From Selaginella moellendorffii (taxonomy: Eukaryota > Plantae > Lycopodiophyta): a stretch of DNA of 64,000 bases. Every line of letters begins with the position of its first letter. Positions within the stretch are counted from its first letter, which is position 1. A model generated the notes under the pieces. The model saw nothing but the letters and a program-made list of their open reading frames with translations, was not told the DNA's origin and made no database searches. Shown piece after piece: positions 7,734 through 64,000 of this stretch. The position numbers and the translations under genes are program-made. The stretch spans positions 1,248,769 to 1,312,768 of the forward strand of contig NW_003314311.1 in NCBI RefSeq assembly GCF_000143415.4, given 5' to 3'.

Positions 7734-7790
7734 TGGTATCAGAGCGCTGGTTTCTGAACTCTTTCTTCTCCTTTCTTTGTGCCTCACATC

Positions 7791-10700
7791 ATGAGCTGCA
7801 GCAAAGTTGGATTGATCTTGCTTCAGGGAGTCACTGCCTTTGATGGGAGGAGAGGGTTCAACACTTGGTCCGAGAAAATGATGCGCGTGCTGCAGATGGA
7901 AGAACTCTGGGAAATCGTTTCACCACCAACAATCGCTGCAGATGCTCGTACGCGGCGAGCCCCTGCTGCGTTGGGAGCTTCAACTTCAGTGGAAGGAGAA
8001 GTTGTGGATGAAGAGGCAATTCGTGCCTCTGTTGCAGCAGCTCGACAACAGCTTGATTCAGGGGAACAAGCTGCGCTGGAGAAGAAGGAATCTCGAGCAA
8101 AAGGATTGATTCTTTCTAAGCTTGCAGATGCCCTTATGATGTGTTTGCGTCATAAGTGTGCTTGTGAGATCTGGGCTCATCTCCACAACAAGTATGCTGT
8201 TCTTTCCCTCTCCAAGATTAGCATGGTCGAGACTTGCATTCGTGAGACCCGTTTTCATCCAGGCGAGAACTTTGAAGAGTTCCTCGCCAAGATGCAAGAC
8301 CTGTGGATGGAGCTTGAAGGCAGTCCAGCAGCGTTCAACGAAAGCAAGAAAGTTCTGGCACTTTGCGAGGCCATGCAAGATTCTTCTTTTAGTTCTTTCG
8401 TCCCTACCGTTCGCATGATGTCGCTCAACTTTGAACAAGCTGAGCAAACTTTACGCTCGGAGCTGGCTGCGAGAGGTTTGATTGTGGACTTTGATCAGAG
8501 GCCTTCCCATGTTTTGATCTCACAGTCTACATCAAATGCTTCTGCATCAAGCAATCAGTCAGGGACTGATTCAGCTCTGTGGGCTGGAAATCATCGAGGC
8601 AGAGGAGGCCGCGGAAGAGGAGGACGAGGCAGAGGTCGCGGGTTTAGGGGAAATCCGCAGCAGCAGCAGAATTCAGGGAATTCTGGTAAAGAAGCAGCAG
8701 TTCGGGATTGTTTTGTGGGCAAGAACAAACAAGAATGCTGGACCTGTGGGATGCCAGGGCACTACTCCATGGATTGCCCAGTTGCAGCTTGGCTGCAGCG
8801 CATGAACATAGGGCTCGCAGCAAATGCTCAGGAAGGGGAAACACAGGAACTTGCGGCATCATCTGAGGTAGCAGTTCCAAACGTTTCTGAAAAACTGACC
8901 ATCGATTCAGGTTCAGAGAGACACCTGATGCAAAGCGGGTCGAACTTTGTGCAGTTGCGTGCTGCAAAAGGGAAGTGCATTCGTGTGGGAGATGGAAGCA
9001 TTTTACCTGTTCGCGCAACTGGGGATGTGCGAGTTCCACTGGGAAGAAAGACTCTGCTCTTGAAGAATGTGTGGTATGTTCCAAAGATAGTGAAGAATCT
9101 GGTTTCTGTAGCCAGGCTTACGGATGAAGGTCTGGATGTGAATTTCTCCAAACATCAATGTCAAGTTCTTGCAAATGGCCGTCCATTACTGCATTTTCCC
9201 AGATGTGGTAACCTGTTTGAGAAGGAGATAGCTTCTGGAGAAAAATCGAATGCTCCTGAGATATGCATGACTGCAGATAGTTCTCTCTGGCATTCTCAAC
9301 TTGCACATGCCAATCCCCCTCTCATCAGGCGTATGCAGAAGCAGGAGCTTGTGGATGGCTTCAACGACCACGTTCTTCAAAGTTCAGCAAAATGTCACAC
9401 TTGCATTCTTGGCAAGCAAACCCGTCGCACTTTCAAACCTACTGTGACCAGAAGCACTCGTCCCTTGCAGCTCATTCACTCAGATGTTTGTGGACCCATG
9501 CGACTGTTTGCTCAGAATGGCACGAAGTATTTTGTGACATTTACAGATGATTTCTCCAGGCACACAGATGTCTTCTTTCTTCGTCACAAAGATGAAGTCT
9601 TTAGCAAATTCAAGCAATTCGTAGTAGAAGCCGAAGTGAAAACTGGTCAGAGGGTTGGTTGTTTACGTACTGATTCAGGAGGGGAATACGTCAACAAGTC
9701 CTTTCAGCAGTTCTGTGCTGAACAAGGAATTCTTCATCAGCGCTCTTGCTCTCATACCCCTCAACAGAATGGAGTCTTTGAGCGCAAGAATAGGACAATC
9801 ATGAACGCAGTTCGGTGCTTCCTTCAAGAATCAGGACTACCAAAATTCCTCTGGGCTGAAGCAGTTGGATCAGCTGTGCATGTTCAAAACCTTCTCCCTC
9901 ATTCTCGCAATCCCAACAAGATCCCAGAAGAGCTTTGGACTGGTCAAAGACAATCGGTGGTGCATCTCAGGCGTTTTGGTTGTTTAAGCTTTGCAAAAAG
10001 GGTGGATGAGCATCTTGGCAAGTTGGAGAGCAGAAGCAAGCTGGCCTTTCTTGTTGGATATGATTCCAATTCAAAAGGATATCACCTGTACCAGCTTGGT
10101 AATCATCAAATTTTTGTAAGCATTGATGTTCGTTTTGATAAAGGAACACTCTACAAAGATCATGTTCAAGAAGAAGGAAGCTTAGATCAGAACATGAACT
10201 GGACTCCAGAAGAATGGAGTTGGGATGGTGTTGAAGACGGTGATGAAGATGACGATGATCTGACAATCATCTATCCCTCATCTCCTTTAGCAGATGATCA
10301 TCCAACACCAGTCTCTGGATCTTTTCTTCCTGAAGAACAGGGCGATGCTACTCATCGTGCACGAACTGGAGAAGTCAACAGGCTCACACGTGATCTACCA
10401 TTCAATGTGGAGAACTATGGGCGGACATCATCTGGACGATCAAGCAGAGCACCTCATCCCAAGCAATGGTCTTTTGCAGCAACAGAAATAGCTTCTGAAC
10501 CAGTCAACTTTGAGCAGGCAATTCAAGCTCCTGATGCAGATAAGTGGATTTCAGCAATGCAAGATGAGTTGAATTCTCTTGATGAGAACCAGACTTATGA
10601 CTTGGTGGAAGCTCCTGAAGGATGTGAAGTTGTTGGATCACGCTGGGTGTTCAAGCTTCACAGAAATCCTGATGGATCGGTACAACGTTACAAAGCAAGA

Positions 10701-12062
10701 CTTGTTGCTCAAGGATATTCACAAGTTCCTGGAGTGGATTTTGATGAGACGTTCTCACCAATTGTGAAGCAGACAAGTATCAGAATGCTTCTGGCTTTTA
10801 CAGTGGAGTTTGGTTTGTGCGCACATCACATGGACGTAAAAACAGCCTCCCTTAATGGGAACTTGAAGGAGGAGATATTTATGCGGCAACCCCCAGGTTT
10901 TGAGCTTTTTGGATCACGGTGCTCCGAACTCGTCTGCAAGCTTCGCAAGGCTCTTTATGGCCTTAAGCAGGCTTCCTGTCAGTGGTATGAATGTTTGGAT
11001 TCTTTTCTTATGGATCTCGGTATGCAGAGGTTGAACAGTGATGGAAATTTATATCTTCTTCAGCAGGGTGATCACTTTGTTGTGATAGCAGTTTATGTGG
11101 ACGACTGTTTGATTGTCAGCAACAATCACACTGTTTTGAAGGATCTGAAGATCAAGCTTATGAACAAGTTTGTGATGAAGGACTTAGGAGCTGTGCGGCA
11201 GCTATTAGGGATGGAAGTTGACAGGGATGAAGCAGACAGGACAATCACCCTCACACAATGCCAATATGTGAAGAAGCTTCTCAACCAGTTCAACATGACA
11301 AGTTGCAAATCCATGGCTACACCAGTCGTCACTGGCATCAAGTTCACAAGCAAGATGGATGATTTATTTGATCAGCCCTCGGTCTACCGATCGCTTGTTG
11401 GAGGACTACTCTACCTCGCCAACATGACTCGCCCCGACATCTCCTTTGCTATTGGTCTCCTCAGCCGATACATGCAGTCTCCGAGTTGTTATCATTGGCA
11501 GATGGCGAAGAGAGTTTTGAGGTATTTGAAAGGAACGGCTACTCATGGATTGGTTTACAAATGCTCAGGTCAATCCAAACTTGTTCTTCAAGCCTACTGC
11601 GATGCAGATTGGGCTGGCAACTTGGATACACGACATTCAACCTCCGGAATTTGCTGCATAATTGCCGGTGCTCCAGTTTCATGGGGAAGCAAGAAGCAAA
11701 CGACAGTTGCTCTTTCCAGTGCAGAAGCAGAATACGTAGCTGCCAGTACAGCAGCAAGGGAGATCATCTGGCTTCGTCGATTACTTGGAGAACTCAATCA
11801 ACAGCAATCAGATGCAACCATTCTGCATTGCGACAGCAGAAGTGCAATCGCCATGTCAAAGAATCCTGTGTTTCATGCTCGTACGAAACATATAGACATG
11901 CAGCATCACTTCATTCGCAAACATGTAGCAGCCGGAGATCTTCACCTGGAATACGTTCCTTCACAGTATCAGTTGGCGGACCTTCTAACCAAGCCACTTT
12001 CGGAGCTCACATTCATCAAGCTGAGGAATCAACTTGGAGTGTCAAGCACACCCTCAGCTTGA
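7791..12062 (+). CDS. Copia gag-pol polyprotein (gag, Zn knuckle, protease, integrase, RT, RNase H)
   Basis: Uninterrupted ORF with CWTCGMPGHYSMDC, IDSGSERH, HSDVCGP/LRTDSGGEY/ERKNR, YKARLVAQG, YVDD, CDADWAG and QLADLLTK. Integrase precedes RT, the copia order. Confidence 0.96.
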   Translation: MSCSKVGLILLQGVTAFDGRRGFNTWSEKMMRVLQMEELWEIVSPPTIAADARTRRAPAALGASTSVEGEVVDEEAIRASVAAARQQLDSGEQAALEKKESRAKGLILSKLADALMMCLRHKCACEIWAHLHNKYAVLSLSKISMVETCIRETRFHPGENFEEFLAKMQDLWMELEGSPAAFNESKKVLALCEAMQDSSFSSFVPTVRMMSLNFEQAEQTLRSELAARGLIVDFDQRPSHVLISQSTSNASASSNQSGTDSALWAGNHRGRGGRGRGGRGRGRGFRGNPQQQQNSGNSGKEAAVRDCFVGKNKQECWTCGMPGHYSMDCPVAAWLQRMNIGLAANAQEGETQELAASSEVAVPNVSEKLTIDSGSERHLMQSGSNFVQLRAAKGKCIRVGDGSILPVRATGDVRVPLGRKTLLLKNVWYVPKIVKNLVSVARLTDEGLDVNFSKHQCQVLANGRPLLHFPRCGNLFEKEIASGEKSNAPEICMTADSSLWHSQLAHANPPLIRRMQKQELVDGFNDHVLQSSAKCHTCILGKQTRRTFKPTVTRSTRPLQLIHSDVCGPMRLFAQNGTKYFVTFTDDFSRHTDVFFLRHKDEVFSKFKQFVVEAEVKTGQRVGCLRTDSGGEYVNKSFQQFCAEQGILHQRSCSHTPQQNGVFERKNRTIMNAVRCFLQESGLPKFLWAEAVGSAVHVQNLLPHSRNPNKIPEELWTGQRQSVVHLRRFGCLSFAKRVDEHLGKLESRSKLAFLVGYDSNSKGYHLYQLGNHQIFVSIDVRFDKGTLYKDHVQEEGSLDQNMNWTPEEWSWDGVEDGDEDDDDLTIIYPSSPLADDHPTPVSGSFLPEEQGDATHRARTGEVNRLTRDLPFNVENYGRTSSGRSSRAPHPKQWSFAATEIASEPVNFEQAIQAPDADKWISAMQDELNSLDENQTYDLVEAPEGCEVVGSRWVFKLHRNPDGSVQRYKARLVAQGYSQVPGVDFDETFSPIVKQTSIRMLLAFTVEFGLCAHHMDVKTASLNGNLKEEIFMRQPPGFELFGSRCSELVCKLRKALYGLKQASCQWYECLDSFLMDLGMQRLNSDGNLYLLQQGDHFVVIAVYVDDCLIVSNNHTVLKDLKIKLMNKFVMKDLGAVRQLLGMEVDRDEADRTITLTQCQYVKKLLNQFNMTSCKSMATPVVTGIKFTSKMDDLFDQPSVYRSLVGGLLYLANMTRPDISFAIGLLSRYMQSPSCYHWQMAKRVLRYLKGTATHGLVYKCSGQSKLVLQAYCDADWAGNLDTRHSTSGICCIIAGAPVSWGSKKQTTVALSSAEAEYVAASTAAREIIWLRRLLGELNQQQSDATILHCDSRSAIAMSKNPVFHARTKHIDMQHHFIRKHVAAGDLHLEYVPSQYQLADLLTKPLSELTFIKLRNQLGVSSTPSA

Positions 12063-29729: not shown

Positions 29730-32675
29730 CTACCAGTAGTCCTTGCATGAGCAAAACCCGTCTTTGAACTCGTGAAACCGGTTGGCGTCTCTCACTGTGA
29801 TTTGCCTCCCTGTGATCTTGGAGATGAACTTGGTAGCCGTGTGACAATCGGTGCAAACCCGGAGATTTTTCACCACCCGGAGAGGAGTTCCACTCGGTGT
29901 CGATATCAAGCCAAAAGCCATAGCTTGCTTCTCGCTATGATAGCAAAGAACTTGCTCTTTCTCCTCCTCTTCCACGTCCATCAACACCACCTCCGTGTCT
30001 GGAACATAGCCGGCCTCTCTCATCAGCACCCCGAGTCTCTGCAGCTCTGCGAAGATCTCGTCGTTTCGAGGATGAGTCCTGCTTCCGGAAGCAAACTTAT
30101 GGACCTTGTCCTTGATCTCGATCCAGCTCAAACCGGGGACTTTCTTTCCGCAGTCACGACCAATCCGTCTCCTCAGCTTCGCGGCGGCATCAAACTTCCC
30201 ACACACTGCGTGGATGTCCGAAAGTAGCACGTAAGAAGCCGAGTTCCTCCGGTTTAGCTGGACAAGCCGCTGAGCTGCTCGGACACCCCGTTTCATATCC
30301 TTGTGGACTTTGCAAGCGTTGAGAAAACTCATCCAAGCGATAAAGTCCGGCTCCAGCGTCATGTTTTCTAGCAAGTCCTCCACGTCCTGGAGCTGTCCCA
30401 GCCTCCCCAGCAAGTCGAGAATGCAAGCGTAGTTCTCGTTCACTGGAGAGAGGCCATAGTCTTGGAGCATTGAGACGAACCAGTTGCGAGCATCCTTGAG
30501 CAGCCCGGCATGGTTGCATCCGCTCATAACTTTGACGAAGATCACGGTGTCGATGGCCTCTCCGGCCTGCTGCATCGCGTGGAAGAGCTCGAAAGCAGCA
30601 CTGGCACTTCCCTGTTGAGCATACGCTGCTATGATCGAAGTCCACGAAACCATGTCCTTGGAAGCCATCTTCTCAAAGACCTGCCTTGCTTCGTTCAGCT
30701 TCCCACACTTCCCATACATGTTTACCAGCGTGTTCTTCACAACCATGTCCTGCTCGAGCTCCGTCCCGGCAACAGTGGCATGAAGAATCCTGGCTTGAGC
30801 TAGCGCGGCCAAGTTAGCACAAACGTCGAGAACGAGTGAAAACGCTACCTTGTCAGCTCTCACTCCTTCTATGTCCATTCTTTTGAAGAGCTCAAGAGCT
30901 TCCAGTCCCTGTCCCTGCTGAGAATGAGCTGCGATCATCGCGGTCCAGACAACCACTGACTTGTTGTGCATGGCGTCGAAAACTTCGATTGCCTTGTCAG
31001 GAACGTCACATCTGGAATACATGTTGATGAGATTGGTGCCGAGAACAGTGTCTAGCTCGCATCCCAGAGTGATCATTCTGTAATGAAGCAGCTGACCGAG
31101 AGTTAGATCCGGTAAACACGCACAGGCCTCGATAACACTCGTGAAAGTTGATCTGTCACCTCTAAGTCCTTCCAGCTCCATCTTTCGAAACATAACTATC
31201 GAGTTTGCAGGACGAGACTGTTGATTGCAAGCTGCTATAATCCCGTTCCACGAAACCACGTCCCTTTGAGACATATTCTCAAACTTCGCCATCGCATCCT
31301 CATAGCTTCCAACTCTGCTATAGAGATTGATAACTGCGGATTCAAAACCAATATCACCCTCGATTCCGCTGCTCCTGTCGAGTGCTCTTGCTTCTTTCAA
31401 GCCTCGGATGGATACACACGCCTCAAAAGCCGCGTAGAAGCTCAACTTATCCGGCTTCATTCCCTCCAAGTCCATTTCTCTAAACAGCTGCAGTGCCTGA
31501 TGACCATGCCCGAGCCGGGCATACGATCCTACGATGCTGTTCCACAAACCTACTGTCGCATTCTTCCCGGCTGTTCTATCAAAAACCATCTTTCCTTCCT
31601 CCAAACTTCCACACTTCCCATACATGTTGACAAGGCAGTCGGTCACGCTGAGCTCCAAACTACAAGCTTCGATACGCTGGTGTATAAGCCTCCCACGGAC
31701 TAAGTCCTGTAAGTTCGCACAGCAATCCAAAACGCTCACGAAAGTCACAGCATCCGGCTCAAAACCTTCAAAGTCCATCACCTCTAGCAGCTTGAGACCC
31801 TCCAAAAACCGGCCATTTTGAGCATACGCACCAGTCATGATCGTCCACGAGACAACGTCCTTGAAAGGCATCCAATCCAAAATCCTCCTCGCATCCTCCA
31901 GCCTCCTGCATTTCCCATACAGCGTTATAAGCGAGTTTCCAAGCAGAAGATCACACTCTACAAAACCAGAAGCTACAGCACTCTCGTAAACTCTCTCACC
32001 TTCTTGGCACTCACCTTGGCTGGAGCAAGCATCCAAAACGCACGTAAGAGTCGCGGCTTGAGGCCTCACTCCTCGCTGCTGCATCGCTTGAACAAACTTT
32101 AGTGCCTCGCGACCATTCTTTTGCTGCGAGCAAGCCGAAAGAATCGCGTTCCAAGTCACAACATCCGGCCTTGGAGTGCTGTAAAAGATCTTCGCTGCCT
32201 CCTCCAAGCTCCCACACTTTCCATACAGCGTCACCAAAGAGTTCCTCACCACGGTATCCTGTGAAAGCCGCGAATCCTCCGCTATAGCCTCGTAGATCCT
32301 TCTTCCTTCCACGAGAGACCCCAGCGAAGAACACGAGCTTAGCACGGAGCTCACGATGAAAGCGTCCGGGAGAGCGCCACCGTCGTATAGCATTCTCCAG
32401 TAGTGCTCTATCGCCTCACTGTAATGCCCGTTTTGGGCAAAGCCTGTGACGATCATCGTCCATGAGAAGACATTCTTCTCTTGGATCCCATCGAAGACGC
32501 GCTTGGCGTCGCCGATGCTAGAGAGCTTGGCATACATCGCTATCAGGAGATTTGCCAAGTAAGTGGAATCGATGGCGCCGCTAGAAGCGAGAATCTCGCG
32601 GTGCAATGCCTGGCCCTCCTCCAAGACGCGGCAGTGGCGAATGCGCGCGGCGAGATCGTTGAGCCGCGATCGCAT
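29730..32675 (-). CDS. PLS-class PPR protein with E/E+/DYW deaminase domain (organellar C-to-U editing factor)
   Basis: Intronless ORF with PLS repeats, PG box PGLSWIEI, HSEK, CTDCH and terminal CSCKDYW. Confidence 0.96.
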   Translation of the reverse strand: MRSRLNDLAARIRHCRVLEEGQALHREILASSGAIDSTYLANLLIAMYAKLSSIGDAKRVFDGIQEKNVFSWTMIVTGFAQNGHYSEAIEHYWRMLYDGGALPDAFIVSSVLSSCSSLGSLVEGRRIYEAIAEDSRLSQDTVVRNSLVTLYGKCGSLEEAAKIFYSTPRPDVVTWNAILSACSQQKNGREALKFVQAMQQRGVRPQAATLTCVLDACSSQGECQEGERVYESAVASGFVECDLLLGNSLITLYGKCRRLEDARRILDWMPFKDVVSWTIMTGAYAQNGRFLEGLKLLEVMDFEGFEPDAVTFVSVLDCCANLQDLVRGRLIHQRIEACSLELSVTDCLVNMYGKCGSLEEGKMVFDRTAGKNATVGLWNSIVGSYARLGHGHQALQLFREMDLEGMKPDKLSFYAAFEACVSIRGLKEARALDRSSGIEGDIGFESAVINLYSRVGSYEDAMAKFENMSQRDVVSWNGIIAACNQQSRPANSIVMFRKMELEGLRGDRSTFTSVIEACACLPDLTLGQLLHYRMITLGCELDTVLGTNLINMYSRCDVPDKAIEVFDAMHNKSVVVWTAMIAAHSQQGQGLEALELFKRMDIEGVRADKVAFSLVLDVCANLAALAQARILHATVAGTELEQDMVVKNTLVNMYGKCGKLNEARQVFEKMASKDMVSWTSIIAAYAQQGSASAAFELFHAMQQAGEAIDTVIFVKVMSGCNHAGLLKDARNWFVSMLQDYGLSPVNENYACILDLLGRLGQLQDVEDLLENMTLEPDFIAWMSFLNACKVHKDMKRGVRAAQRLVQLNRRNSASYVLLSDIHAVCGKFDAAAKLRRRIGRDCGKKVPGLSWIEIKDKVHKFASGSRTHPRNDEIFAELQRLGVLMREAGYVPDTEVVLMDVEEEEKEQVLCYHSEKQAMAFGLISTPSGTPLRVVKNLRVCTDCHTATKFISKITGRQITVRDANRFHEFKDGFCSCKDYW

Positions 32676-33005
32676 CCACCTCACATTCGATCGATCGCGC
32701 GAGCCCTAGAAAAACAGGGGATTATAGTAAGTCTTGTCATAAACCCTAGAGCATTTTCGCGATGGCGAGGTCGAGGAGCGCCAATGCGGCGGTGGGGCTA
32801 GGGTTCGCCGCCTTCGCGCTGGCGATGGGAGCTCTTCCATTCTTCATCAGGTACTGGCTGGAAACGCATTCATAGCGCTTGCATTGGATGATTTCCTGTG
32901 GATTCTTGCGTTCTTGGCCTCCGATTCATCCGAGGGATGATATTTCGAGGTCTAGATGCTATCCTCGGTGATTGTTGTGTCTGGAGTTTTTTCTCTCTTT
33001 TTTTT

Positions 33006-57289: not shown

Positions 57290-57760
57290 CGTCGTGATCA
57301 ACCTCAACTTTGCGAAGTTCTCCAAATGGCTATGGTATCCCTTCGATTTTCGCGATTCCACGGCGGCCGTGACTACTACTCTTGGAGTCTCTCCAGTGGC
57401 TCACAGATCGAGAACACCCTCTTCACGATCGCTTCGTATCGCAGTTTCTTCTCCAAGTAATCGCGGGGCGACGAATTTTGATGCTTCGCTACCACCACCG
57501 CGTTCTTTGCAGCGATGAAGATCTTGACATACTCCCGCAGCGGCTCGGCTTCCTCGATCACCTCCTCGCTCCTCAGATACGTCAAGCACTGACTGACGAT
57601 CCACCATCGCCGCAAACTCCTTGCCCATTGCCTGCTGCTCGCCATGGGCTGGAGAAGGCATGGCGAATATAGTCCAGCTTCTTCTACGCTCATCCTCGCA
57701 GAGATCCAGGCGGCTTCTTTTGCTGAACTTTTTGAAGAGAAAGATGGTGTGATCCAAAAT
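57290..57760 (-). pseudogene. Truncated, deleted paralogue of the 60119-60973 ORF
   Basis: GEQQAMG, QCLTYLRSEEVIEEAEPLREYVKIFIAAKN..HQNSSPRDYL are shared with 60119-60973. Internal deletions and frameshifts; 5' end missing. Confidence 0.88.
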
Positions 57761-58209
57761 CTCGCCTACTCTACTTTAAGGACTGTGTCTGTGAGAGCAT
57801 GGCTAGACAATTCCACTCTTACTTTGCCAAGTTGAAGATTAAACCTTTTAAAAAATATCTATAAAAAAATTTCCTTATAATAAAAACAAAGGAAGCATAA
57901 ATAGCAAAAAACCACTACAACATTATTATAAAATAAATTTTATAAAAATTAGATCTATACGACAATTTATTCTTATAAAAAAGTCTTATAATAATTTTTC
58001 AGCTGTAATAATTTAATTAATGGTATTTGATAACTAACCATCAGGAAGAAATGAAATAAAGATGAGTGAAAAACAAAATGATAGAAATAGAATTAGCCAC
58101 TAATAGAATCATCCCTTTTGTTTTTCCTCTAATTGGATTTGATCCTGCAAAGATTAAAGCATTTTTAATCAGCCATTTTTCACTGTACTTATATAATACC
58201 CCTTTTCTT

Positions 58210-59709
58210 TTATACTAGTCTCATGGCCTGGAATAATCTGTTCATGCATTTCCAGTCAACTGCTTCCGGCTCAAATGGCATGTTGTAAAACAAATCCCTT
58301 GCAGCCTCTATGTAGTTGGCTCTCATGAGAAGATCTAGCACACAGCAGTAAACTTCCCTCGTTGGAGCAATACCAAAGTCACAAACCATGCACTGCAAGT
58401 ATTTCCAAGCAGTGTAGACATCGCCGCCATGGTTGCATCCAACCAAGATGGAAAGGAGCGTCGCAGTCTCAGGCTCGACTCCCTCCACCACCATCGTGTG
58501 TACCAATCTCAAAACCTCGCTAATAAACCCAACCTTCGCATTGCCCGCCACCATTATATTCCACGACACAGAGCTGAGCTTTGGAGCTCTAAGAAACACG
58601 GCCTGGGCATATTCGAGGCATCCATTACCAACATAGGCAGCCAGAAGAGTATTCCATAGCGCCTGGTCTTTATACGTGAACCTATGAAACAAAGACACGG
58701 CTTTGTCAAGATTCCCGGACTGGGAATATGCCGAGAGCATGACAGTACAGGAGACAAGGTTTGAAGGCAGTATTTCATATACTCTAATGGCATCTTCAAG
58801 ATGCCCATTTCGGGTATATGCCAGAAGCATGTTATTCCAAGTGACGGAATCCCAGTACGGCATGGAGCTGACAAGTACAGTAGATTCCTCTACAGCGCCA
58901 TGCATTTCATACAGAAGCAACATTGTGTTACAAGCCACTGTATCGTGCATTTTCATGCCAGAAAACAAGGTTTTCGCTTGATCGAGATACCCGATTTGGG
59001 TATAAGTTTTCAAAAGAACATTCCACGAGAACATATCTCTGGCGGGCATAGAATCAAAGAAGCTCTTTGCATCGCAAGCTTTTGACGTTCTCGCAAATGT
59101 ATTTAGAATGGTGTTGTATGACACCAGCGTCCACTCGCGCATCGAATCAAACAAATCTTTTGCCTGATCGTAGCTTTCATTCGCTGCCATTAGAGTGTTG
59201 CAGCAAACCACGTCCCACTCCGGCATGTCATCAAACAAAACATTCGCATTATCAAAACACTTCGCATTTACAAATGCCGCAAGCATCGCCGTATATGAGA
59301 AGATATCCCACGCAGGCATCCCACAAAAGATTCGCTCGGATTCCTGCAAATGCCCAAGCCGGGCATATGCGCCAAGAAGACAATTCCACGCAACTAGACT
59401 CGGATCCGGCATTAGATCAAACGTTTTCTTAGCTTGGACGAGAAAACCATTCCTTCCGTACGCGGAGATCATGAGAACCCACGAGTGGGAGTCTTTGGGA
59501 GAAATATCCGCAAAGATCTTCTCGGCACTCTCGACGCTCCCACACCTGCCGTACATCTCCACGAGGAGATTCGAGAGATAGAGCCGCGAGTTCAGCACTA
59601 GAGACTGCCGCGAGAAGACCCACTCGTGAATCACTCGAGCCCGGCTCTCGCTGCGGCAAGACCGGATGAGCTCGACGCAATCCTTGAGCGTCTCAGCAGC
59701 GGTAACCAT
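58210..59709 (-). CDS. PLS-class PPR protein (499 aa, rich in short repeats, truncated E, no DYW)
   Basis: NLLVEMYGRCGSVESA, repeated FD.MP..D..SWN units, and CCVLDLL...NMPFEPEAVDW. Confidence 0.88.
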   Translation of the reverse strand: MVTAAETLKDCVELIRSCRSESRARVIHEWVFSRQSLVLNSRLYLSNLLVEMYGRCGSVESAEKIFADISPKDSHSWVLMISAYGRNGFLVQAKKTFDLMPDPSLVAWNCLLGAYARLGHLQESERIFCGMPAWDIFSYTAMLAAFVNAKCFDNANVLFDDMPEWDVVCCNTLMAANESYDQAKDLFDSMREWTLVSYNTILNTFARTSKACDAKSFFDSMPARDMFSWNVLLKTYTQIGYLDQAKTLFSGMKMHDTVACNTMLLLYEMHGAVEESTVLVSSMPYWDSVTWNNMLLAYTRNGHLEDAIRVYEILPSNLVSCTVMLSAYSQSGNLDKAVSLFHRFTYKDQALWNTLLAAYVGNGCLEYAQAVFLRAPKLSSVSWNIMVAGNAKVGFISEVLRLVHTMVVEGVEPETATLLSILVGCNHGGDVYTAWKYLQCMVCDFGIAPTREVYCCVLDLLMRANYIEAARDLFYNMPFEPEAVDWKCMNRLFQAMRLV

Positions 59710-60118
59710 TCGATGGAAAAGTTAATATCACGTAGATCCCATCCAGCAGTCTTGATCGACACAGATTGTGGCATCTCGTTTGTTTTTCTCTCGAACGAGC
59801 ACCTGCAAAAACGCAAGGAGTCATTGAGTTAATATCACATACCAATCGTGATCGACACAGAAACACGTTCGAACGACAAAAAGGAAAGGAGTCGAGTTAG
59901 ATGTAGTAGAAAAATTTATGTCACATACTGAGGCAGTAGCTCTTCCCATCCAGCAACCTTGATCACGAAAACAAAGCCATGAACAAAGAGAAACGAAATA
60001 TTGTCTCGGCGTATATAAATAACCATTGCTGAGATACGATTGTCTCTGATATTTTTATCTCTTGACCATCTACTTGTTTTCACATACCATCTTTGTTTGG
60101 GTTTCAGTGACGGCTCCG

Positions 60119-60973
60119 TCATCCTTGCATTAGAAAACCTTTTCTCTGCATTAAATTCTTTCGTTTCCTTCTCCTCCACTCCCGCGCTTCCACGCTCAAC
60201 TTCGCGAAGTTCCCCAAATGGCTGAGATATCCCTTCGATTTTGCGATTCCAAGCTCCCAGTGGCCGTGACTACTACTCTTGGAGTCACTCATCCTCTCCA
60301 GTAGCCTCTTCGCGATCGCTTCGTATCGCAGTTTCTTCGCCAAGTAATCGCGGGGCGACGAATTTTGATGCTCTTCTACCACCACCGAGTTCTTCGCAGC
60401 TATGAAAATCTTCACATACTCCCGCAGCGGCTCGGCATGCTTCCTCACCTCCTCGCTCCTCAGATACTCCGAGTATGTCAAGCACTGACGATCCACCAGA
60501 GATGATCCATCGCTCTTCTTCGCTGAAAACTCCTCGCCAATTGCCTGCTGCTCGCCTCCAAGCAAATGAAACACCGGCGAGCCAAGATCGCTCGAAAAGG
60601 CGAGACGAATATCGTCAAGCTTCTTGTCGAGATGTCTACGCTCGTTCTCGCGGAGATCCAAACGGCTTCTATTCGCATGGACGATTTGGAACCACGCGAA
60701 GAGCCTCCCAAAGAGAAAGATGGTGTTCTCGCATACGTACTCTTTGTGGCGAGGGAGACCTTTGACATAGTATTGCTCAAAGCCCCTGTGGATGAGACTG
60801 TGGATCCGCGAGGAGAGCTCCCTGGCCGCGATGGAGAGAGGGATTTGGAACTCCGCGGATACCCTGTGCCTCCTCAGGCGCTCACCATGAAGATAGCTCC
60901 ATAACTGGAAGCCCACGCTGATAAATCCCACCACCAGTGCCACTCCAGCCGCTACAGTGGCCGAGAGATCCAT
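60119..60973 (-). CDS. Intronless protein with N-terminal TM helix; resembles an uncharacterised bacterial family (284 aa)
   Basis: Open frame from ATG, hydrophobic residues 4-27, motifs PLSIAARELSSRI, YVCENTIFLFG, FHLLGGEQQAIGE and CLTYSEY. Two degraded paralogues in the window support it as a real gene family. Confidence 0.75.
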   Translation of the reverse strand: MDLSATVAAGVALVVGFISVGFQLWSYLHGERLRRHRVSAEFQIPLSIAARELSSRIHSLIHRGFEQYYVKGLPRHKEYVCENTIFLFGRLFAWFQIVHANRSRLDLRENERRHLDKKLDDIRLAFSSDLGSPVFHLLGGEQQAIGEEFSAKKSDGSSLVDRQCLTYSEYLRSEEVRKHAEPLREYVKIFIAAKNSVVVEEHQNSSPRDYLAKKLRYEAIAKRLLERMSDSKSSSHGHWELGIAKSKGYLSHLGNFAKLSVEAREWRRRKRKNLMQRKGFLMQG

Positions 60974-61197
60974 GAGAAGTCTTGAAGAGACTCAGCCTTC
61001 TTTCTCTTCTTTCGCTTTCGCCAACCATTGTTGACTTAGTCAAGAAAGGAAGTTGCTCTCGCTTCGGATGTCGGTGGCGACGTAGTCGGGGTTTTGACGA
61101 GCTCAGGACCAGACTGGGGTCTACAGTCGCAAGGCATATGGATGAGAGATTGGCACCCTTTTCCCAAAGAGAGTTCTAGTTATTCTTTTATACTGGC

Positions 61198-62270
61198 TTG
61201 TCTTTCCCTCGTTGGAACAATAACAAAGTCACAAACCATGCACTGCAAGTATTTCCAAGCGGTGTAGACATCGCCGCCATGGTTGCATCCAACCAAGATG
61301 GAAAGGAGCGTCATATTCTCAGGCTCGACTCCCTCCACCACCATCATGTGTACCAATCTCAAAACCTCGCCAACTTTCGCATTTTCCGCCACCATTATAT
61401 TCCACGAAACAGAGCTAAGCTTTGGAGCTCTAACAAGCACAGCCTGCGCATATTCGAGGCATCCATTGCCAACATACTAGAACCTGGCCTTTAGAACGAG
61501 AATCTACGAAACAAAGGCATGGCCTTCCGGACTGCGAATATGCCGAGAGCATGACAGTACAGTTTGTCATATACTCTAATGGCATCTTCAAGATGCCCTT
61601 TTTGGGTATATGCCAAAACCATGTTATTCCAAGTGACGGAATCCCAGCACGGCATGGAGCTGACAAGTACAGTAGATTCCTCTACAACGCCATGGATTAC
61701 ATACGAAAGCAGCATTGTGTTACAAGCCACTGAGTCGTGCACTTTCATGCCTGAAAACAAAGATTTTGCATGACCAAGATACCCACTTTGGGCGTAAGTT
61801 ATCAAAAGGACATTCCACGAGAACATATCTCTGGCAGGCATAGAATCTCTTTGCTCTTTGAAGCTCTTTGCATCACAAGCTTTTAATGTTCTCGATAATG
61901 TTTTTAGAATGGTGTTGTATGACACCAGTGCCCATTCGCGCAACGAATCAAACAAATCTTTTGCCTGATCGTAGCTTTCATTTGCTGCCATTAGAGTGTT
62001 GCAGCAAACCACGTCCCACTCCGGCATGTCATCAAACAAAACCTTCGCATTATCGAAACACTTCGCATTTACAAATGCGGCAAGCATCGCCGTATGTGAG
62101 AAGATATCCCACGCAGGCATTCCAAAAGATTCGCTCGGATTCTCGCAAATGCCCAAGCCGGGCATAACGCGCCGAGAAGGCAATTCCACGCAACTAGACT
62201 GGGATCCGGCATTAGGTCAAACGTTTTCTTAGCTTATTCCTTCCGTACGCGGAGATCATGAAAACCCACG
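61198..62270 (-). pseudogene. Pseudogenised copy of the PPR gene at 58210-59709
   Basis: Near-identical peptides (MPEWDVVCCNTLMAANESYDQAKDLFDS) with several frameshifts and deletions. Confidence 0.9.
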
Positions 62271-62335
62271 GCTCATTGGATTATAAAGTTCAAAGTTTGA
62301 AGCTAGGTTGATCCATAATACAGCATTCTACCCCC

Positions 62336-62722
62336 ATGGCATTCTGTTTGATCCATCTCGTCTTGGTGCTATTGGCCATCTTCCATGGTACAAGCGCCCT
62401 GTGTCCTCCTGATAATCATTTTGAAAACTCATGCCAAAATATCAAGTACAACGGCTGTCAGCTTGTTGCAACTTGTCCTGATAGGAATGGTTTGCGGAGG
62501 GTGAGCAGCCTGGATGTGAACACTTGCATCAGCAACAACGGAAGGTCCTTGAACTGTGGCCACGGTTTCCAAGCGACATGCATGAATGTGAGGTGCTACT
62601 ATGCTACTCCCAGGGCCTACATCAATGCTGAGTGTGCTAAACCCAACGGGGTATACATGTCCACCACAATAAACGTTGGCAATTGCATCAAGAACAACGA
62701 CGGTGTGCTTGCATGCTGCTAA
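62336..62722 (+). CDS. Secreted cyanovirin-N homologue (CVNH lectin), 128 aa
   Basis: Signal peptide plus two internal repeats of F..(S/T)C...L.A.C....G....S(S/T)(L/I)(D/N)V..CI.NN(D)G.L, the CVNH signature. TATAAA about 50 bp upstream. Confidence 0.9.
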   Translation: MAFCLIHLVLVLLAIFHGTSALCPPDNHFENSCQNIKYNGCQLVATCPDRNGLRRVSSLDVNTCISNNGRSLNCGHGFQATCMNVRCYYATPRAYINAECAKPNGVYMSTTINVGNCIKNNDGVLACC

Positions 62723-62899
62723 GCAAATATCTAGGTGCCATAAAATATGAGCAAATCCTAATAAAAATAGATTCATATGTTACAAGAATGATAACTGTGA
62801 TTGAGTATTGTCATAGTACTACCAGATACCATGTACCAGAAGCAGTATGATTGCATGTATGTAGTAACATGTTGTGCGACACTTAGTGAGGTTGAGAGC

Positions 62900-63230
62900 G
62901 TGGATCGACCTTTTGAGGTAGTACTTCTCAAAAACAAGATTGTGGATCTGCGAGGAGAGCTCCCTGGCGACCATAGAGAGGGGGATTTGGAACTCTACAG
63001 ATGTCCTGTGCCTCAATCACTCGCATCGCGTTGTTTTTTATTACAGTGCTACAATTTGCCACTGCCTGTTAAGGCGGTCAACGGGCCAGGGCTTGCCCGT
63101 TGACCGCTATCGCCGGGCTTGCACCTTAAATGCGGTAATGGGCTCGTCCTGGCCCGTTAACAGCCTTATAGCTGGAATCCACGCTGTTAAATCCCACCAC
63201 CAGTGCACAACAGTGGCCGAGATCCATGAG
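62900..63230 (-). pseudogene. Third, interrupted copy of the 60119-60973 ORF (5' part)
   Basis: MDL-ATV start region and EFQIPLSMVARELSSQIH match; interrupted by an insertion at ~63015-63168. Confidence 0.82.
63070..63168. mobile_element. ~99-bp MITE-like element with 21-bp terminal inverted repeats
   Basis: TAAGGCGGTCAACGGGCCAGG (63070-63090) versus CCTGGCCCGTTAACAGCCTTA (63148-63168), 2 mismatches. No TSD seen. Confidence 0.6.
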
Positions 63231-63539
63231 AAGAACGCTTCCCAAAAACGAATTGATGACAAGTTTCTAAACGCTTTGCACGAGAAACGTTCGAGTGAGA
63301 AAAAAACTCCCAGGTTTTACTCATGTAATAAAAAAATGCCATGTTGCGGATTCTTGTCGATACAATGTTAGTCGATGCCCCTTCTTTGTTGACTTAATAT
63401 GACATTAGCATGTGAGAGATTTTATGTGGTTTGGTTAAGCAAGGAGAATATGGTTGGAATTTCTGGCATATTCCATTGTGTTATATTATAAACATGTTTA
63501 TTTAGACTTTCTGAAACAAATTTTATAAAAATCTTAATA

Positions 63540-64000
63540 ATTTATAAACTTTCTGAAAACTTGCCTTTGGGCTGGATGCAACCATGGCCGCCTCTCTATG
63601 TAATTGGCTCTCATGAGAAGACTCGTTGAAACAATACCAAGGGTCGCAAATGATGTGTATGGTAATAATAAGAAGGATTATAAACCCATTTCCAATGTAT
63701 AACCATGCCCGCCACCACCTAGCATTTACAAGTAAAACAACAATTACCAAAACGCTTACCTGATCAAAATGAAGGTAAATATGAGTGAAGAAGTAGACAA
63801 AGAGCAGCACTCGAAAGATCTAGAACACAAAGAGAAAATCGCAAAAGGAGTCAAGATCTTTGGTCATTATATTCCACGAAGCTTTGCTTGGCCTGGTCTT
63901 TCTGCAAGAACATACGAAACAAAGACACGGCCTGGTCAAGATTTCCGGACTGGGAATATGCCGAGAGCATAATAGCATAGCATCTTCAAGATGCCCGTTC
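63540..64000 (-). pseudogene. Third, more degraded PPR copy (continues past window end)
   Basis: aaacaaagacacggc..gtcaagatt.ccggactgggaatatgccgagagcat and gcatcttcaagatgccc match 58687-58806; cctctatgta.ttggctctcatgaga matches 58304-58330. Confidence 0.8.

What the first reader, a model, noticed from the sequence alone, without database searches (positions are those of the whole stretch)
60119..60973. Intronless bacterial/prophage-like gene amplified in a plant tandem array: candidate horizontally acquired defence gene
Seen: an intronless 284-aa ORF with one N-terminal TM helix and no plant domain I recognise, in a window where most core genes have many introns. It has two decayed paralogues within 6 kb. 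Recalled, not verified: the motif series PL..AA.(D/E)L.SR, Y...NT.(F/Y)L, F.L..GEQ.AIGE, C(L/I).Y.E(F/Y) resembles an uncharacterised bacterial family, some members of which are annotated as lysogenic conversion proteins of P2-like prophages. Established: P2-like accessory loci are hotspots of anti-phage genes. Inference: this may be an HGT-derived, possibly immunity-related gene under birth-and-death evolution, lying beside another gene of patchy microbial distribution (CVNH).
Basis: partly seen in the sequence, partly recalled or inferred. Interest (0 to 1): 0.85.

Follow-up and report, generated by a model that had tools for sequence, protein, structure and literature searches.

The report
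Bacterial prophage-type membrane gene in plant
A land-plant genome carries one intact, apparently transcribed, intronless gene for a membrane-anchored protein whose relatives are otherwise bacterial and prophage accessory genes, so it was most likely taken from bacteria; what it does in the plant, including any role in immunity, is untested.

Summary
Window 60119-60973 (minus strand) is an intact 284-aa ORF with one N-terminal membrane helix and no Pfam family. Decayed copies lie 2.9 kb and 2.1 kb away.

It is the consensus of a large bacterial family: 333 hits, best E 6.5e-17. Members include the "lysogenic protein" in the Z region of P2-like prophages (phrog_5606). The family is distantly related to Drt1b, the membrane partner of reverse-transcriptase-nitrilase defence systems.

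The plant gene sits in a 2.8-kb tandem unit together with an RNA-editing-type PPR gene, so it is not contamination. Contigs from eight or nine studies and two organism labels cover it colinearly, but skip the dead copies and the spacer. That fits transcription without introns.

New here: three metagenomic homologues group with it (bootstrap 99), and they share derived motif states found in no other of 309 members. Two of them lie on demonstrably eukaryotic contigs. This points to one old transfer into a eukaryotic lineage.

The defence reading rests only on association. Most bacterial homologues are stand-alone genes in ordinary neighbourhoods with no reverse transcriptase nearby. The plant copy is very divergent.

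Verdict: a credible horizontally acquired gene of unknown function. Moderate interest.

The parts
60119..60973 (-). Intact intronless ORF of 284 aa (stop codon included). It is a divergent member of the bacterial 'P2 Z-region lysogenic protein' / phrog_5606 / Drt1b-like family.
60890..60967 (-). Codons 3-28: the single N-terminal membrane helix (signal anchor), followed by a basic stretch.
   Evidence: Hydropathy peak 2.08; AlphaFold helix with pLDDT 90-95
59998..61035 (-). Stretch covered colinearly by contigs of the probable RNA runs X1, X3 and X8 with 0-2 differences and no joints. Taken as the minimal transcript, with about 62 nt of 5' UTR.
   Evidence: tables 2 and 8
57297..57760 (-). Decayed paralogue A (aa 80-262 equivalents, with frameshifts, deletions and stops). 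No contig of the probable RNA runs lies on it.
62912..63233 (-). Decayed paralogue C. Fragments match aa 35-71 and the start-codon region only.
58210..59709 (-). Intact 499-aa PLS-type PPR gene, the other half of tandem unit A.
   Evidence: (PPR E 9.5e-56)
61180..62189 (-). Broken PPR copy of tandem unit B, split into ORFs of 86 and 232 aa. It is 85% identical to the intact PPR.
63891..63980 (-). PPR fragment of tandem unit C. The array may continue beyond the window end.

Best explanation
The ORF is a horizontally acquired member of a large bacterial family of single-pass membrane proteins, and it is still coding.

What the family looks like (shown):
- One N-terminal membrane helix, then a helical domain of about 200 aa.
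- Conserved motifs PL..AA.DLQSR, NT.F, W, GEQRAIGE and C.GY.
- In E. coli the family is the 'lysogenic protein' at the Z/fun accessory slot of P2-like prophages.
- It is remotely related to Drt1b, the membrane partner of RT-nitrilase defence systems.

History (inferred from the tree and the repeat structure):
- The gene entered a eukaryotic lineage once. The window gene groups with three metagenomic homologues, two of which lie on demonstrably eukaryotic contigs.
- In this land plant it was later caught, together with a neighbouring PPR gene, in a local 2.8-kb tandem duplication.
- Reciprocal decay followed. Unit A kept the PPR gene, unit B kept this gene, and unit C lost both.

Likely mode of action (inferred, not shown):
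- The helix anchors the protein in a membrane. The basic stretch after the helix places the helical bundle in the cytosol.
- There the bundle uses the retained polar cluster (R56, N83/T84, W94, E141-Q142, E147) to bind a partner or ligand.
- By analogy with Drt1b and prophage exclusion genes, the bacterial relatives probably act as membrane-tethered sensors or effectors.
- The plant copy has a very long branch, six altered conserved residues and a new basic C-terminal tail. It has probably changed or narrowed that activity.
For: Family membership:
- phrog_5606 E 2.9e-12.
- 333 phmmer hits, best E 6.5e-17.
- Motif alignment.
- P2-EC58 Z-region ORF1 E 3e-10.
- Atlas shape matches to clusters named 'Phage protein' and 'Lysogenic protein family', TM 0.58-0.85.

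Bacterial range: 183 confirmed loci across Acidobacteriota, Cyanobacteriota, Actinomycetota and Pseudomonadota.

Prophage slot: the gene lies between the tail sheath and tail fibre assembly genes of a P2-like prophage.

Drt1b relation:
- 36 of 37 aligned members hit PADLOC model RTasTM, best E 1.9e-10.
- The biology of that partner protein is described in PMC9226505, PMC9122126 and PMC13275509.

Plant residence:
- The tandem unit is shared with a PLS-type PPR gene.
- The same window holds a DYW-type PPR, an AP2 gene, a U-box ARM gene and a copia element.

Transcription:
- Colinear contigs lie on 59998-61035 in X1, X3 and X8.
- The same runs have none on the decayed copy A, on 61043-61436, or on 62422-62815 and 63013-63200.
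- DNA run X10 covers every bin.
- 20 runs from 8-9 studies hold the stretch.

Eukaryotic clade:
- Bootstrap 99 / SH-aLRT 91.
- The constrained tree is 20.8 log-likelihood units better than the free quick tree.
- GGEQ and AREL.SR occur in the family motifs of only the window, P0003 and P0244 sequences among about 310 members.
- A U6 snRNA gene lies on L085.
- A multi-exon prephenate dehydratase gene lies beside P0244.
Against: - The RNA status of the runs is the tool's guess. Only contigs were available, so strand, ends and expression level are not shown.
- Both differences from organism B are non-synonymous, and two of three paralogues are dead. The survivor could also be drifting.
- The window protein's branch is very long (2.77 substitutions per site). 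Its placement could in principle be affected by long-branch artefacts, although the clade partners have short branches.
- This genome's own proteins are absent from the protein collections. Failure to find plant homologues is therefore weaker evidence than it looks.
- The mechanism is not tested at all. The fold searches gave only generic helical-bundle matches (best Z 8.3, at noise level for helical proteins).
Confidence: 0.72

Rival explanations
1. Transcribed relic. The gene was acquired from bacteria but no longer has a selected function. It is the last open copy of a decaying tandem array and will go the way of its two paralogues.
For: Two of three copies are dead. The branch is very long and six of the 20 invariant or nearly invariant family residues are replaced. 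Three of the four variants seen in other samples change the protein: R112H, L138F and V38A, against one silent change.
Against: An 855-nt frame stayed open across enough time to reach about 30% identity with its nearest relatives. The core residues R56, N83, T84, W94, E141, Q142, G146 and E147 are retained. AlphaFold folds it confidently (pLDDT 84). Organism B also keeps it intact and apparently expressed.
Confidence: 0.2
2. Ancient eukaryotic or plant family inherited vertically and lost many times, rather than a transfer from bacteria.
For: Four sequences from at least three different genomes, two of them demonstrably eukaryotic, form one clade only 27-31% identical to the window protein. 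This implies considerable age. Plant genomes may be under-represented in the databases searched.
Against: No named eukaryotic protein appeared among hits in the 5.8-billion or 1.84-billion sequence collections. Bacterial diversity is vast and spans many phyla. The eukaryotic genes checked (window, L085) read as single uninterrupted ORFs. A scan of JGI metagenomes with the eukaryote-clade alignment found only bacterial-type sequences.
Confidence: 0.06
3. Bacterial contamination or chimeric assembly.
For: The ORF has no introns and its relatives outside the small metagenomic clade are bacterial.
Against: The gene and its pseudogenised copies alternate with copies of a land-plant PLS-type PPR gene in a tandem repeat. 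Independent runs from 8-9 studies and two organism labels hold it. GC3 of 65% is close to the neighbouring genes at 55-59%. It is at most 38% identical to any bacterial protein.
Confidence: 0.02

Closest known systems
P2-EC58 Z-region ORF1, 'putative lysogenic protein' (CAD54907.1; RefSeq 'lysogenic protein' WP_087889723.1; phrog_5606)
   Same: Same family by sequence (E 3e-10 to the phage record, E 2.9e-12 to the PHROG). Same architecture: one N-terminal membrane helix followed by a helical domain. Same motif series.
   Different: The phage gene is a moron at the Z/fun slot of a P2-like prophage, flanked by inverted repeats. The plant gene is chromosomal and only 28% identical. It has S54, S59, H99, Q143 and A221 in place of nearly invariant Q, N, R, R and Q. 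It also carries an extra basic tail of about 55 aa. No function has been shown for either gene.
Drt1b, the transmembrane protein associated with UG1/UG5-large RT-nitrilase systems (PADLOC RTasTM; clusters 85 and 1858 of Mestre et al. 2022)
   Same: Remote profile similarity: 36 of 37 family members hit the model (best E 1.9e-10), and the plant protein hits at E 1.4e-4. Both are single-pass membrane proteins of about 230-250 aa.
   Different: No reverse transcriptase or nitrilase lies next to the plant gene, or next to any of 46 bacterial neighbours examined. E-values are far weaker than expected for true members. This is a sister family, not Drt1b itself.
Bacterium-to-eukaryote transfers of bacterial accessory or immune genes (for example the TIR case in PMC13142454, and the other bacterial-type intronless genes noted in this genome)
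   Same: An intronless gene of bacterial type that is integrated, expressed and patchily distributed among eukaryotes.
   Different: Here the donor family has no demonstrated immune activity, and no plant phenotype or induction pattern is known.

Membership tests
P2 Z-region 'lysogenic protein' family (phrog_5606) | Significant sequence match to the family profile and its members | tested here: met
   phrog_5606 E 2.9e-12 over aa 30-156. 333 phmmer hits, best E 6.5e-17. AJ512683.1 E 3e-10.
P2 Z-region 'lysogenic protein' family (phrog_5606) | One N-terminal membrane helix followed by a helical domain of about 200 aa | tested here: met
   Hydropathy 2.08 at aa 3-21. AlphaFold all-helical, pLDDT 84. 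Shape matches to family clusters, TM 0.58-0.85.
P2 Z-region 'lysogenic protein' family (phrog_5606) | Conserved residues of the motif series (PL..AA.DLQSR, NT.F, W, GEQRAIGE, C.GY) | tested here: inconclusive
   All 5 invariant columns are kept (L53, R56, W94, Q142, G146). Of the 15 nearly invariant columns, six differ: S54, S59, H99, Q143, A221 and position 260. F170 is Y.
P2 Z-region 'lysogenic protein' family (phrog_5606) | Location in a prophage or other mobile element | tested here: not met
   The plant copy lies in a PPR tandem repeat. Most bacterial copies are also stand-alone chromosomal genes. Only 8 of 2.9 million viral contigs carry a relative.
Drt1b (RT-nitrilase-associated membrane protein) | Strong match to the RTasTM profile | tested here: inconclusive
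   Plant protein E 1.4e-4. Best bacterial member E 1.9e-10. This is remote homology only.
Drt1b (RT-nitrilase-associated membrane protein) | Encoded next to a UG1/UG5 reverse transcriptase-nitrilase gene | tested here: not met
   No RVT or nitrilase domain among 25 upstream and 21 downstream neighbours of bacterial homologues. There is none beside the plant ORF, whose immediate neighbours in the tandem unit are PPR copies. The only reverse transcriptase found among the window ORFs scanned is the copia element at 7779-12062.
Horizontally acquired gene in a plant | Physically integrated in host DNA | tested here: met
   The tandem unit is shared with a PLS-type PPR gene, with decayed copies interleaved. 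Plant genes are found elsewhere in the window.
Horizontally acquired gene in a plant | Nested in prokaryotic diversity and absent from most eukaryotes | tested here: inconclusive
   All named hits are bacterial. The small eukaryotic clade has bootstrap 99. However, the tree is unrooted, and plant genome coverage of the databases is uncertain.
Horizontally acquired gene in a plant | Expressed in the host | tested here: inconclusive
   The contig pattern fits a transcript. However, the runs are only guessed to be RNA and no raw reads were available.

The most novel reading that the evidence does not exclude
A prokaryotic prophage-borne membrane effector or sensor, kin of Drt1b and of the P2 Z/fun-slot genes, was domesticated by a eukaryotic lineage. 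It now works as a membrane-tethered component of plant antiviral, anti-microbial or cell-death signalling. This would add a new entry to the short list of immune modules shared between bacteria and eukaryotes.
Probability: 0.1. Interest if true: 0.8.

Novelty: new member of a known kind. Interest (0 to 1): 0.5.

Why it matters
Bacterial genes in plant genomes are a known phenomenon, and this genome seems to have many. What is particular here is the donor family. It is an uncharacterised, Pfam-less group of membrane proteins that occupies a phage-exclusion slot of P2-like prophages and is related to the membrane partner of RT-nitrilase defence systems.

If the stand-alone bacterial proteins prove to be anti-phage effectors, the eukaryotic clade found here would become a test case for how such a protein is re-used after transfer. 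That clade comprises this plant plus three metagenomic homologues, two of them on demonstrably eukaryotic contigs.

The locus also shows a clean example of reciprocal decay after tandem duplication of a two-gene unit.

Tried and rejected
- **Word-indexed search with the plant protein alone:** nothing found. The exhaustive search was needed.
- **Operon partners in bacteria:** no conserved partner and no reverse transcriptase. One subgroup sits between the carboxyltransferase and biotin carboxylase genes of an acyl-CoA carboxylase operon, which argues against a universal defence role.
- **Fold searches:** Foldseek against PDB and BFVD gave nothing at E <= 0.001. VIA-align wide gave a best Z of 8.3 (ClyA protomer, four-helix-bundle chemoreceptor sensor domains). 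This is within the noise range stated for helical proteins, so I do not claim a pore-former or sensor fold.
- **Domain fusions in longer bacterial members:** only a sub-threshold NAL1_N match in two proteins.
- **DUF1088 hit of the plant C-terminus:** 21.7 bits against a cut-off of 27. Treated as spurious.
- **Donor lineage:** not resolvable. FastTree and quick trees placed the long plant branch without support.
- **Identity of the metagenomic eukaryotes:** the atlas search with the neighbouring prephenate dehydratase exon gave no usable taxonomy.
- **Supplements of the P2/P4 hotspot papers:** no mention of this protein.
- **Literature:** no paper on the family's function or on its presence in plants.
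- **The joint at 59789/59866 in one X1 contig:** it has non-canonical ends and the contig carries 13 mismatches. I read it as a paralogous copy with a deletion, not an intron.

Full report
**Observation**

The window holds an ATG-initiated ORF of 284 codons on the minus strand at 60119-60973.
- An in-frame stop lies seven codons upstream, and there is no other upstream ATG.
- Residues 3-21 give the only strong hydropathy peak, 2.08. They are followed by a basic stretch.
- No Pfam or NCBIfam model reaches threshold.
- tblastn of the protein against the window finds two further copies on the same strand.
  - Copy A at 57297-57760 has frameshifts, deletions and stops.
  - Copy C at 62912-63233 keeps only fragments of the N-terminal third.

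**The tandem unit**

The repeats belong to a tandem unit of about 2.8 kb that holds this ORF plus a PLS-type PPR gene.
- Unit A keeps an intact 499-aa PPR (58210-59709) and a dead ORF.
- Unit B keeps the intact ORF and a broken PPR (61180-62189).
- Unit C has fragments of both and runs towards the window end.
- The PPR halves are 85% identical. The ORF halves are 78.6% identical, with gaps.

Elsewhere the window carries a PPR-E-DYW gene, an AP2 gene, a U-box ARM gene, a clathrin exon and a copia element. This is land-plant DNA. Interleaved pseudogenised copies rule out bacterial contamination.

**What the protein is**

Matches to profile libraries:
- PHROGs gives phrog_5606 at E 2.9e-12.
- PADLOC gives a weak match to 'RTasTM'.

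The exhaustive phmmer search finds 333 proteins at E <= 1e-3 and 53 at E <= 1e-10. The best is 38% identical at E 6.5e-17. Hits are mostly 230-270 aa, and the match covers aa 5-190.

A scan of one genome per prokaryotic species confirms 183 loci in Acidobacteriota, Cyanobacteriota, Actinomycetota, Pseudomonadota and other phyla.

An enterobacterial member is 58% identical to ORF1 of the 'proviral Z-region' of phage P2-EC58, annotated 'putitive lysogenic protein'. The plant protein hits the same record at E 3e-10.

In E. coli:
- In EC-107 the gene lies between the tail sheath and tail fibre assembly genes of a P2-like prophage. From my own knowledge of phage P2, this is the position of the Z/fun gene.
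- Other E. coli copies are broken and lie inside an integrative conjugative element.

Only 8 of 2.9 million viral contigs carry a relative. The family is mainly chromosomal, with occasional prophage carriage.

**Relation to known defence components**

Thirty-six of 37 aligned members hit the PADLOC model for the RT-associated membrane protein, best E 1.9e-10.
- That protein is Drt1b, clusters 85/1858. It is encoded beside a minority of UG1/UG5-large RT-nitrilase genes.
- It is reported to be required in the E. coli E101 system (PMC9226505, PMC9122126, PMC13436386, PMC13275509).

However, among 25 upstream and 21 downstream co-directional neighbours of bacterial homologues there is no reverse transcriptase or nitrilase.
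- The neighbours are mostly housekeeping enzymes. A few genes are defence-like: nSTAND1, ResIII/EcoEI_R and SIR2_2.
- Four homologues are followed by a biotin carboxylase gene, and two are preceded by a carboxyltransferase gene.

The family is therefore a stand-alone relative of Drt1b, not Drt1b itself. A defence role is plausible for the prophage copies but is not established for the family.

**Structure**

With the 37-sequence alignment, AlphaFold gives pLDDT 84 and pTM 0.72.
- The membrane helix runs on into a long helix.
- A helical bundle with a small hairpin at 150-164 follows.
- The plant-specific tail (aa 230-284, including RRRKRK) is poorly modelled.

Shape searches:
- They match only the family's own clusters in the ESM Atlas. 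These are named 'Phage protein' and 'Lysogenic protein family', and one is a cyanobacterial cluster with HMA_2.
- PDB and BFVD give nothing significant.
- The wide structural search tops out at Z 8.3, which is noise level for helical proteins.

**Expression**

Twenty runs from eight or nine studies hold the stretch. Nearly all are labelled organism A and one is labelled organism B.

Laying four of them on 57300-63200 (5901 letters) gave the following:
- The three small contig sets guessed to be RNA cover 59998-61035 colinearly, with 0-2 differences and no joints.
- The same three sets have no contig on decayed copy A, on 61043-61436, or on 62422-62815 and 63013-63200.
- The DNA run covers all 30 bins.

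This is the pattern expected of an unspliced transcript of the intact copy. However, the RNA label is a guess, and contigs cannot show strand or ends.

Organism B differs at two positions, both non-synonymous: R112H and L138F.

**A eukaryotic clade**

One hit, P0003 (32% identity), lies on a 1.5-Mb metagenomic contig.
- The contig has no long ORFs around the gene and carries a U6 spliceosomal RNA gene nearby.
- Its true ORF is 283 aa with an N-terminal membrane helix.

Its relatives:
- P0244 is 64% identical. It sits beside a prephenate dehydratase gene split into five pieces, which means a gene with introns.
- P0053 is 47% identical. It is on a short contig.

Shared derived states: in an initial set of 309 members, only the window protein and P0003 have GGEQ and AREL(S/E)SR in the family motifs, the latter losing the otherwise nearly invariant Q. 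P0244, retrieved later, also has both.

Tree evidence:
- A careful IQ-TREE analysis of 60 sequences joins the four with ultrafast bootstrap 99 and SH-aLRT 91.
- Forcing the clade improved the quick tree by 20.8 log-likelihood units.
- The window branch is 2.77 substitutions per site, against 0.25-1.05 for the other three.

A scan of JGI metagenomes with the four-sequence alignment found only bacterial-type sequences.

The simplest reading is one old transfer into a eukaryotic lineage, followed by fast divergence in this plant. The donor is not resolvable.

**Limits**

- This genome's proteins are not in the protein collections. 'No plant homologue found' is therefore suggestive, not conclusive.
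- The identity of the metagenomic eukaryotes is unknown.
- No experiment or induction pattern bears on function.

**Verdict**

The immunity reading is an untested analogy.

The gene is a new, divergent, probably expressed eukaryotic member of an uncharacterised bacterial and prophage membrane-protein family.

Noticed in passing
window 57297-63980: Reciprocal decay after tandem duplication of a two-gene unit. Unit A kept the PPR gene and lost the ORF. Unit B kept the ORF and lost the PPR gene. Unit C lost both.
   Followed up: yes
window 62336-62722 (+): Intact 128-aa CVNH-domain ORF with a signal-peptide-like start, inserted between array units B and C. The probable RNA runs cover only its first ~70 nt (to 62405 in X1; X3 barely touches it), so its expression is unclear.
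   Followed up: partly
L085:4556-4655 and L085:7866-8714: A 1.5-Mb contig of an ENA long-read metagenome (ERZ26858887) is eukaryotic. It carries a U6 snRNA gene and has sparse ORFs. It holds an intronless 283-aa homologue whose public gene call is truncated at the N-terminus and so misses the membrane helix.
   Followed up: partly
L087:5353-8558 and L087:10001-10798: A second metagenomic eukaryote has the homologue about 1.4 kb downstream of a multi-exon prephenate dehydratase gene.
   Followed up: no
L025, L052, L061, L062 (also L033, L064, L070): In several Acidobacteriota-like MAGs the family gene sits, with overlapping stop and start codons, between the carboxyltransferase and biotin carboxylase genes of an acyl-CoA carboxylase operon. 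This context is conserved and not defence-related.
   Followed up: partly
P0006 (Desulforapulum autotrophicum HRM2_22560) and P0022: Two long bacterial members (557 and 622 aa) carry a C-terminal extension with a sub-threshold match to the plant NARROW LEAF 1 N-terminal domain.
   Followed up: no
window 29730-32684 (-): Intact 984-aa PPR-E-DYW RNA-editing-type gene. The plant is therefore a lineage with organellar RNA editing.
   Followed up: no
window 7779-12062 (+): Uninterrupted 1427-aa Ty1/copia polyprotein ORF (gag, integrase, RVT_2), possibly a young element.
   Followed up: no
window 59143-60027: One 807-nt contig of run X1 spans the PPR 5' part and the ORF 3' flank, with 13 mismatches and a 76-nt deletion. 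This points to a further paralogous or allelic unit outside the reference copy.
   Followed up: no
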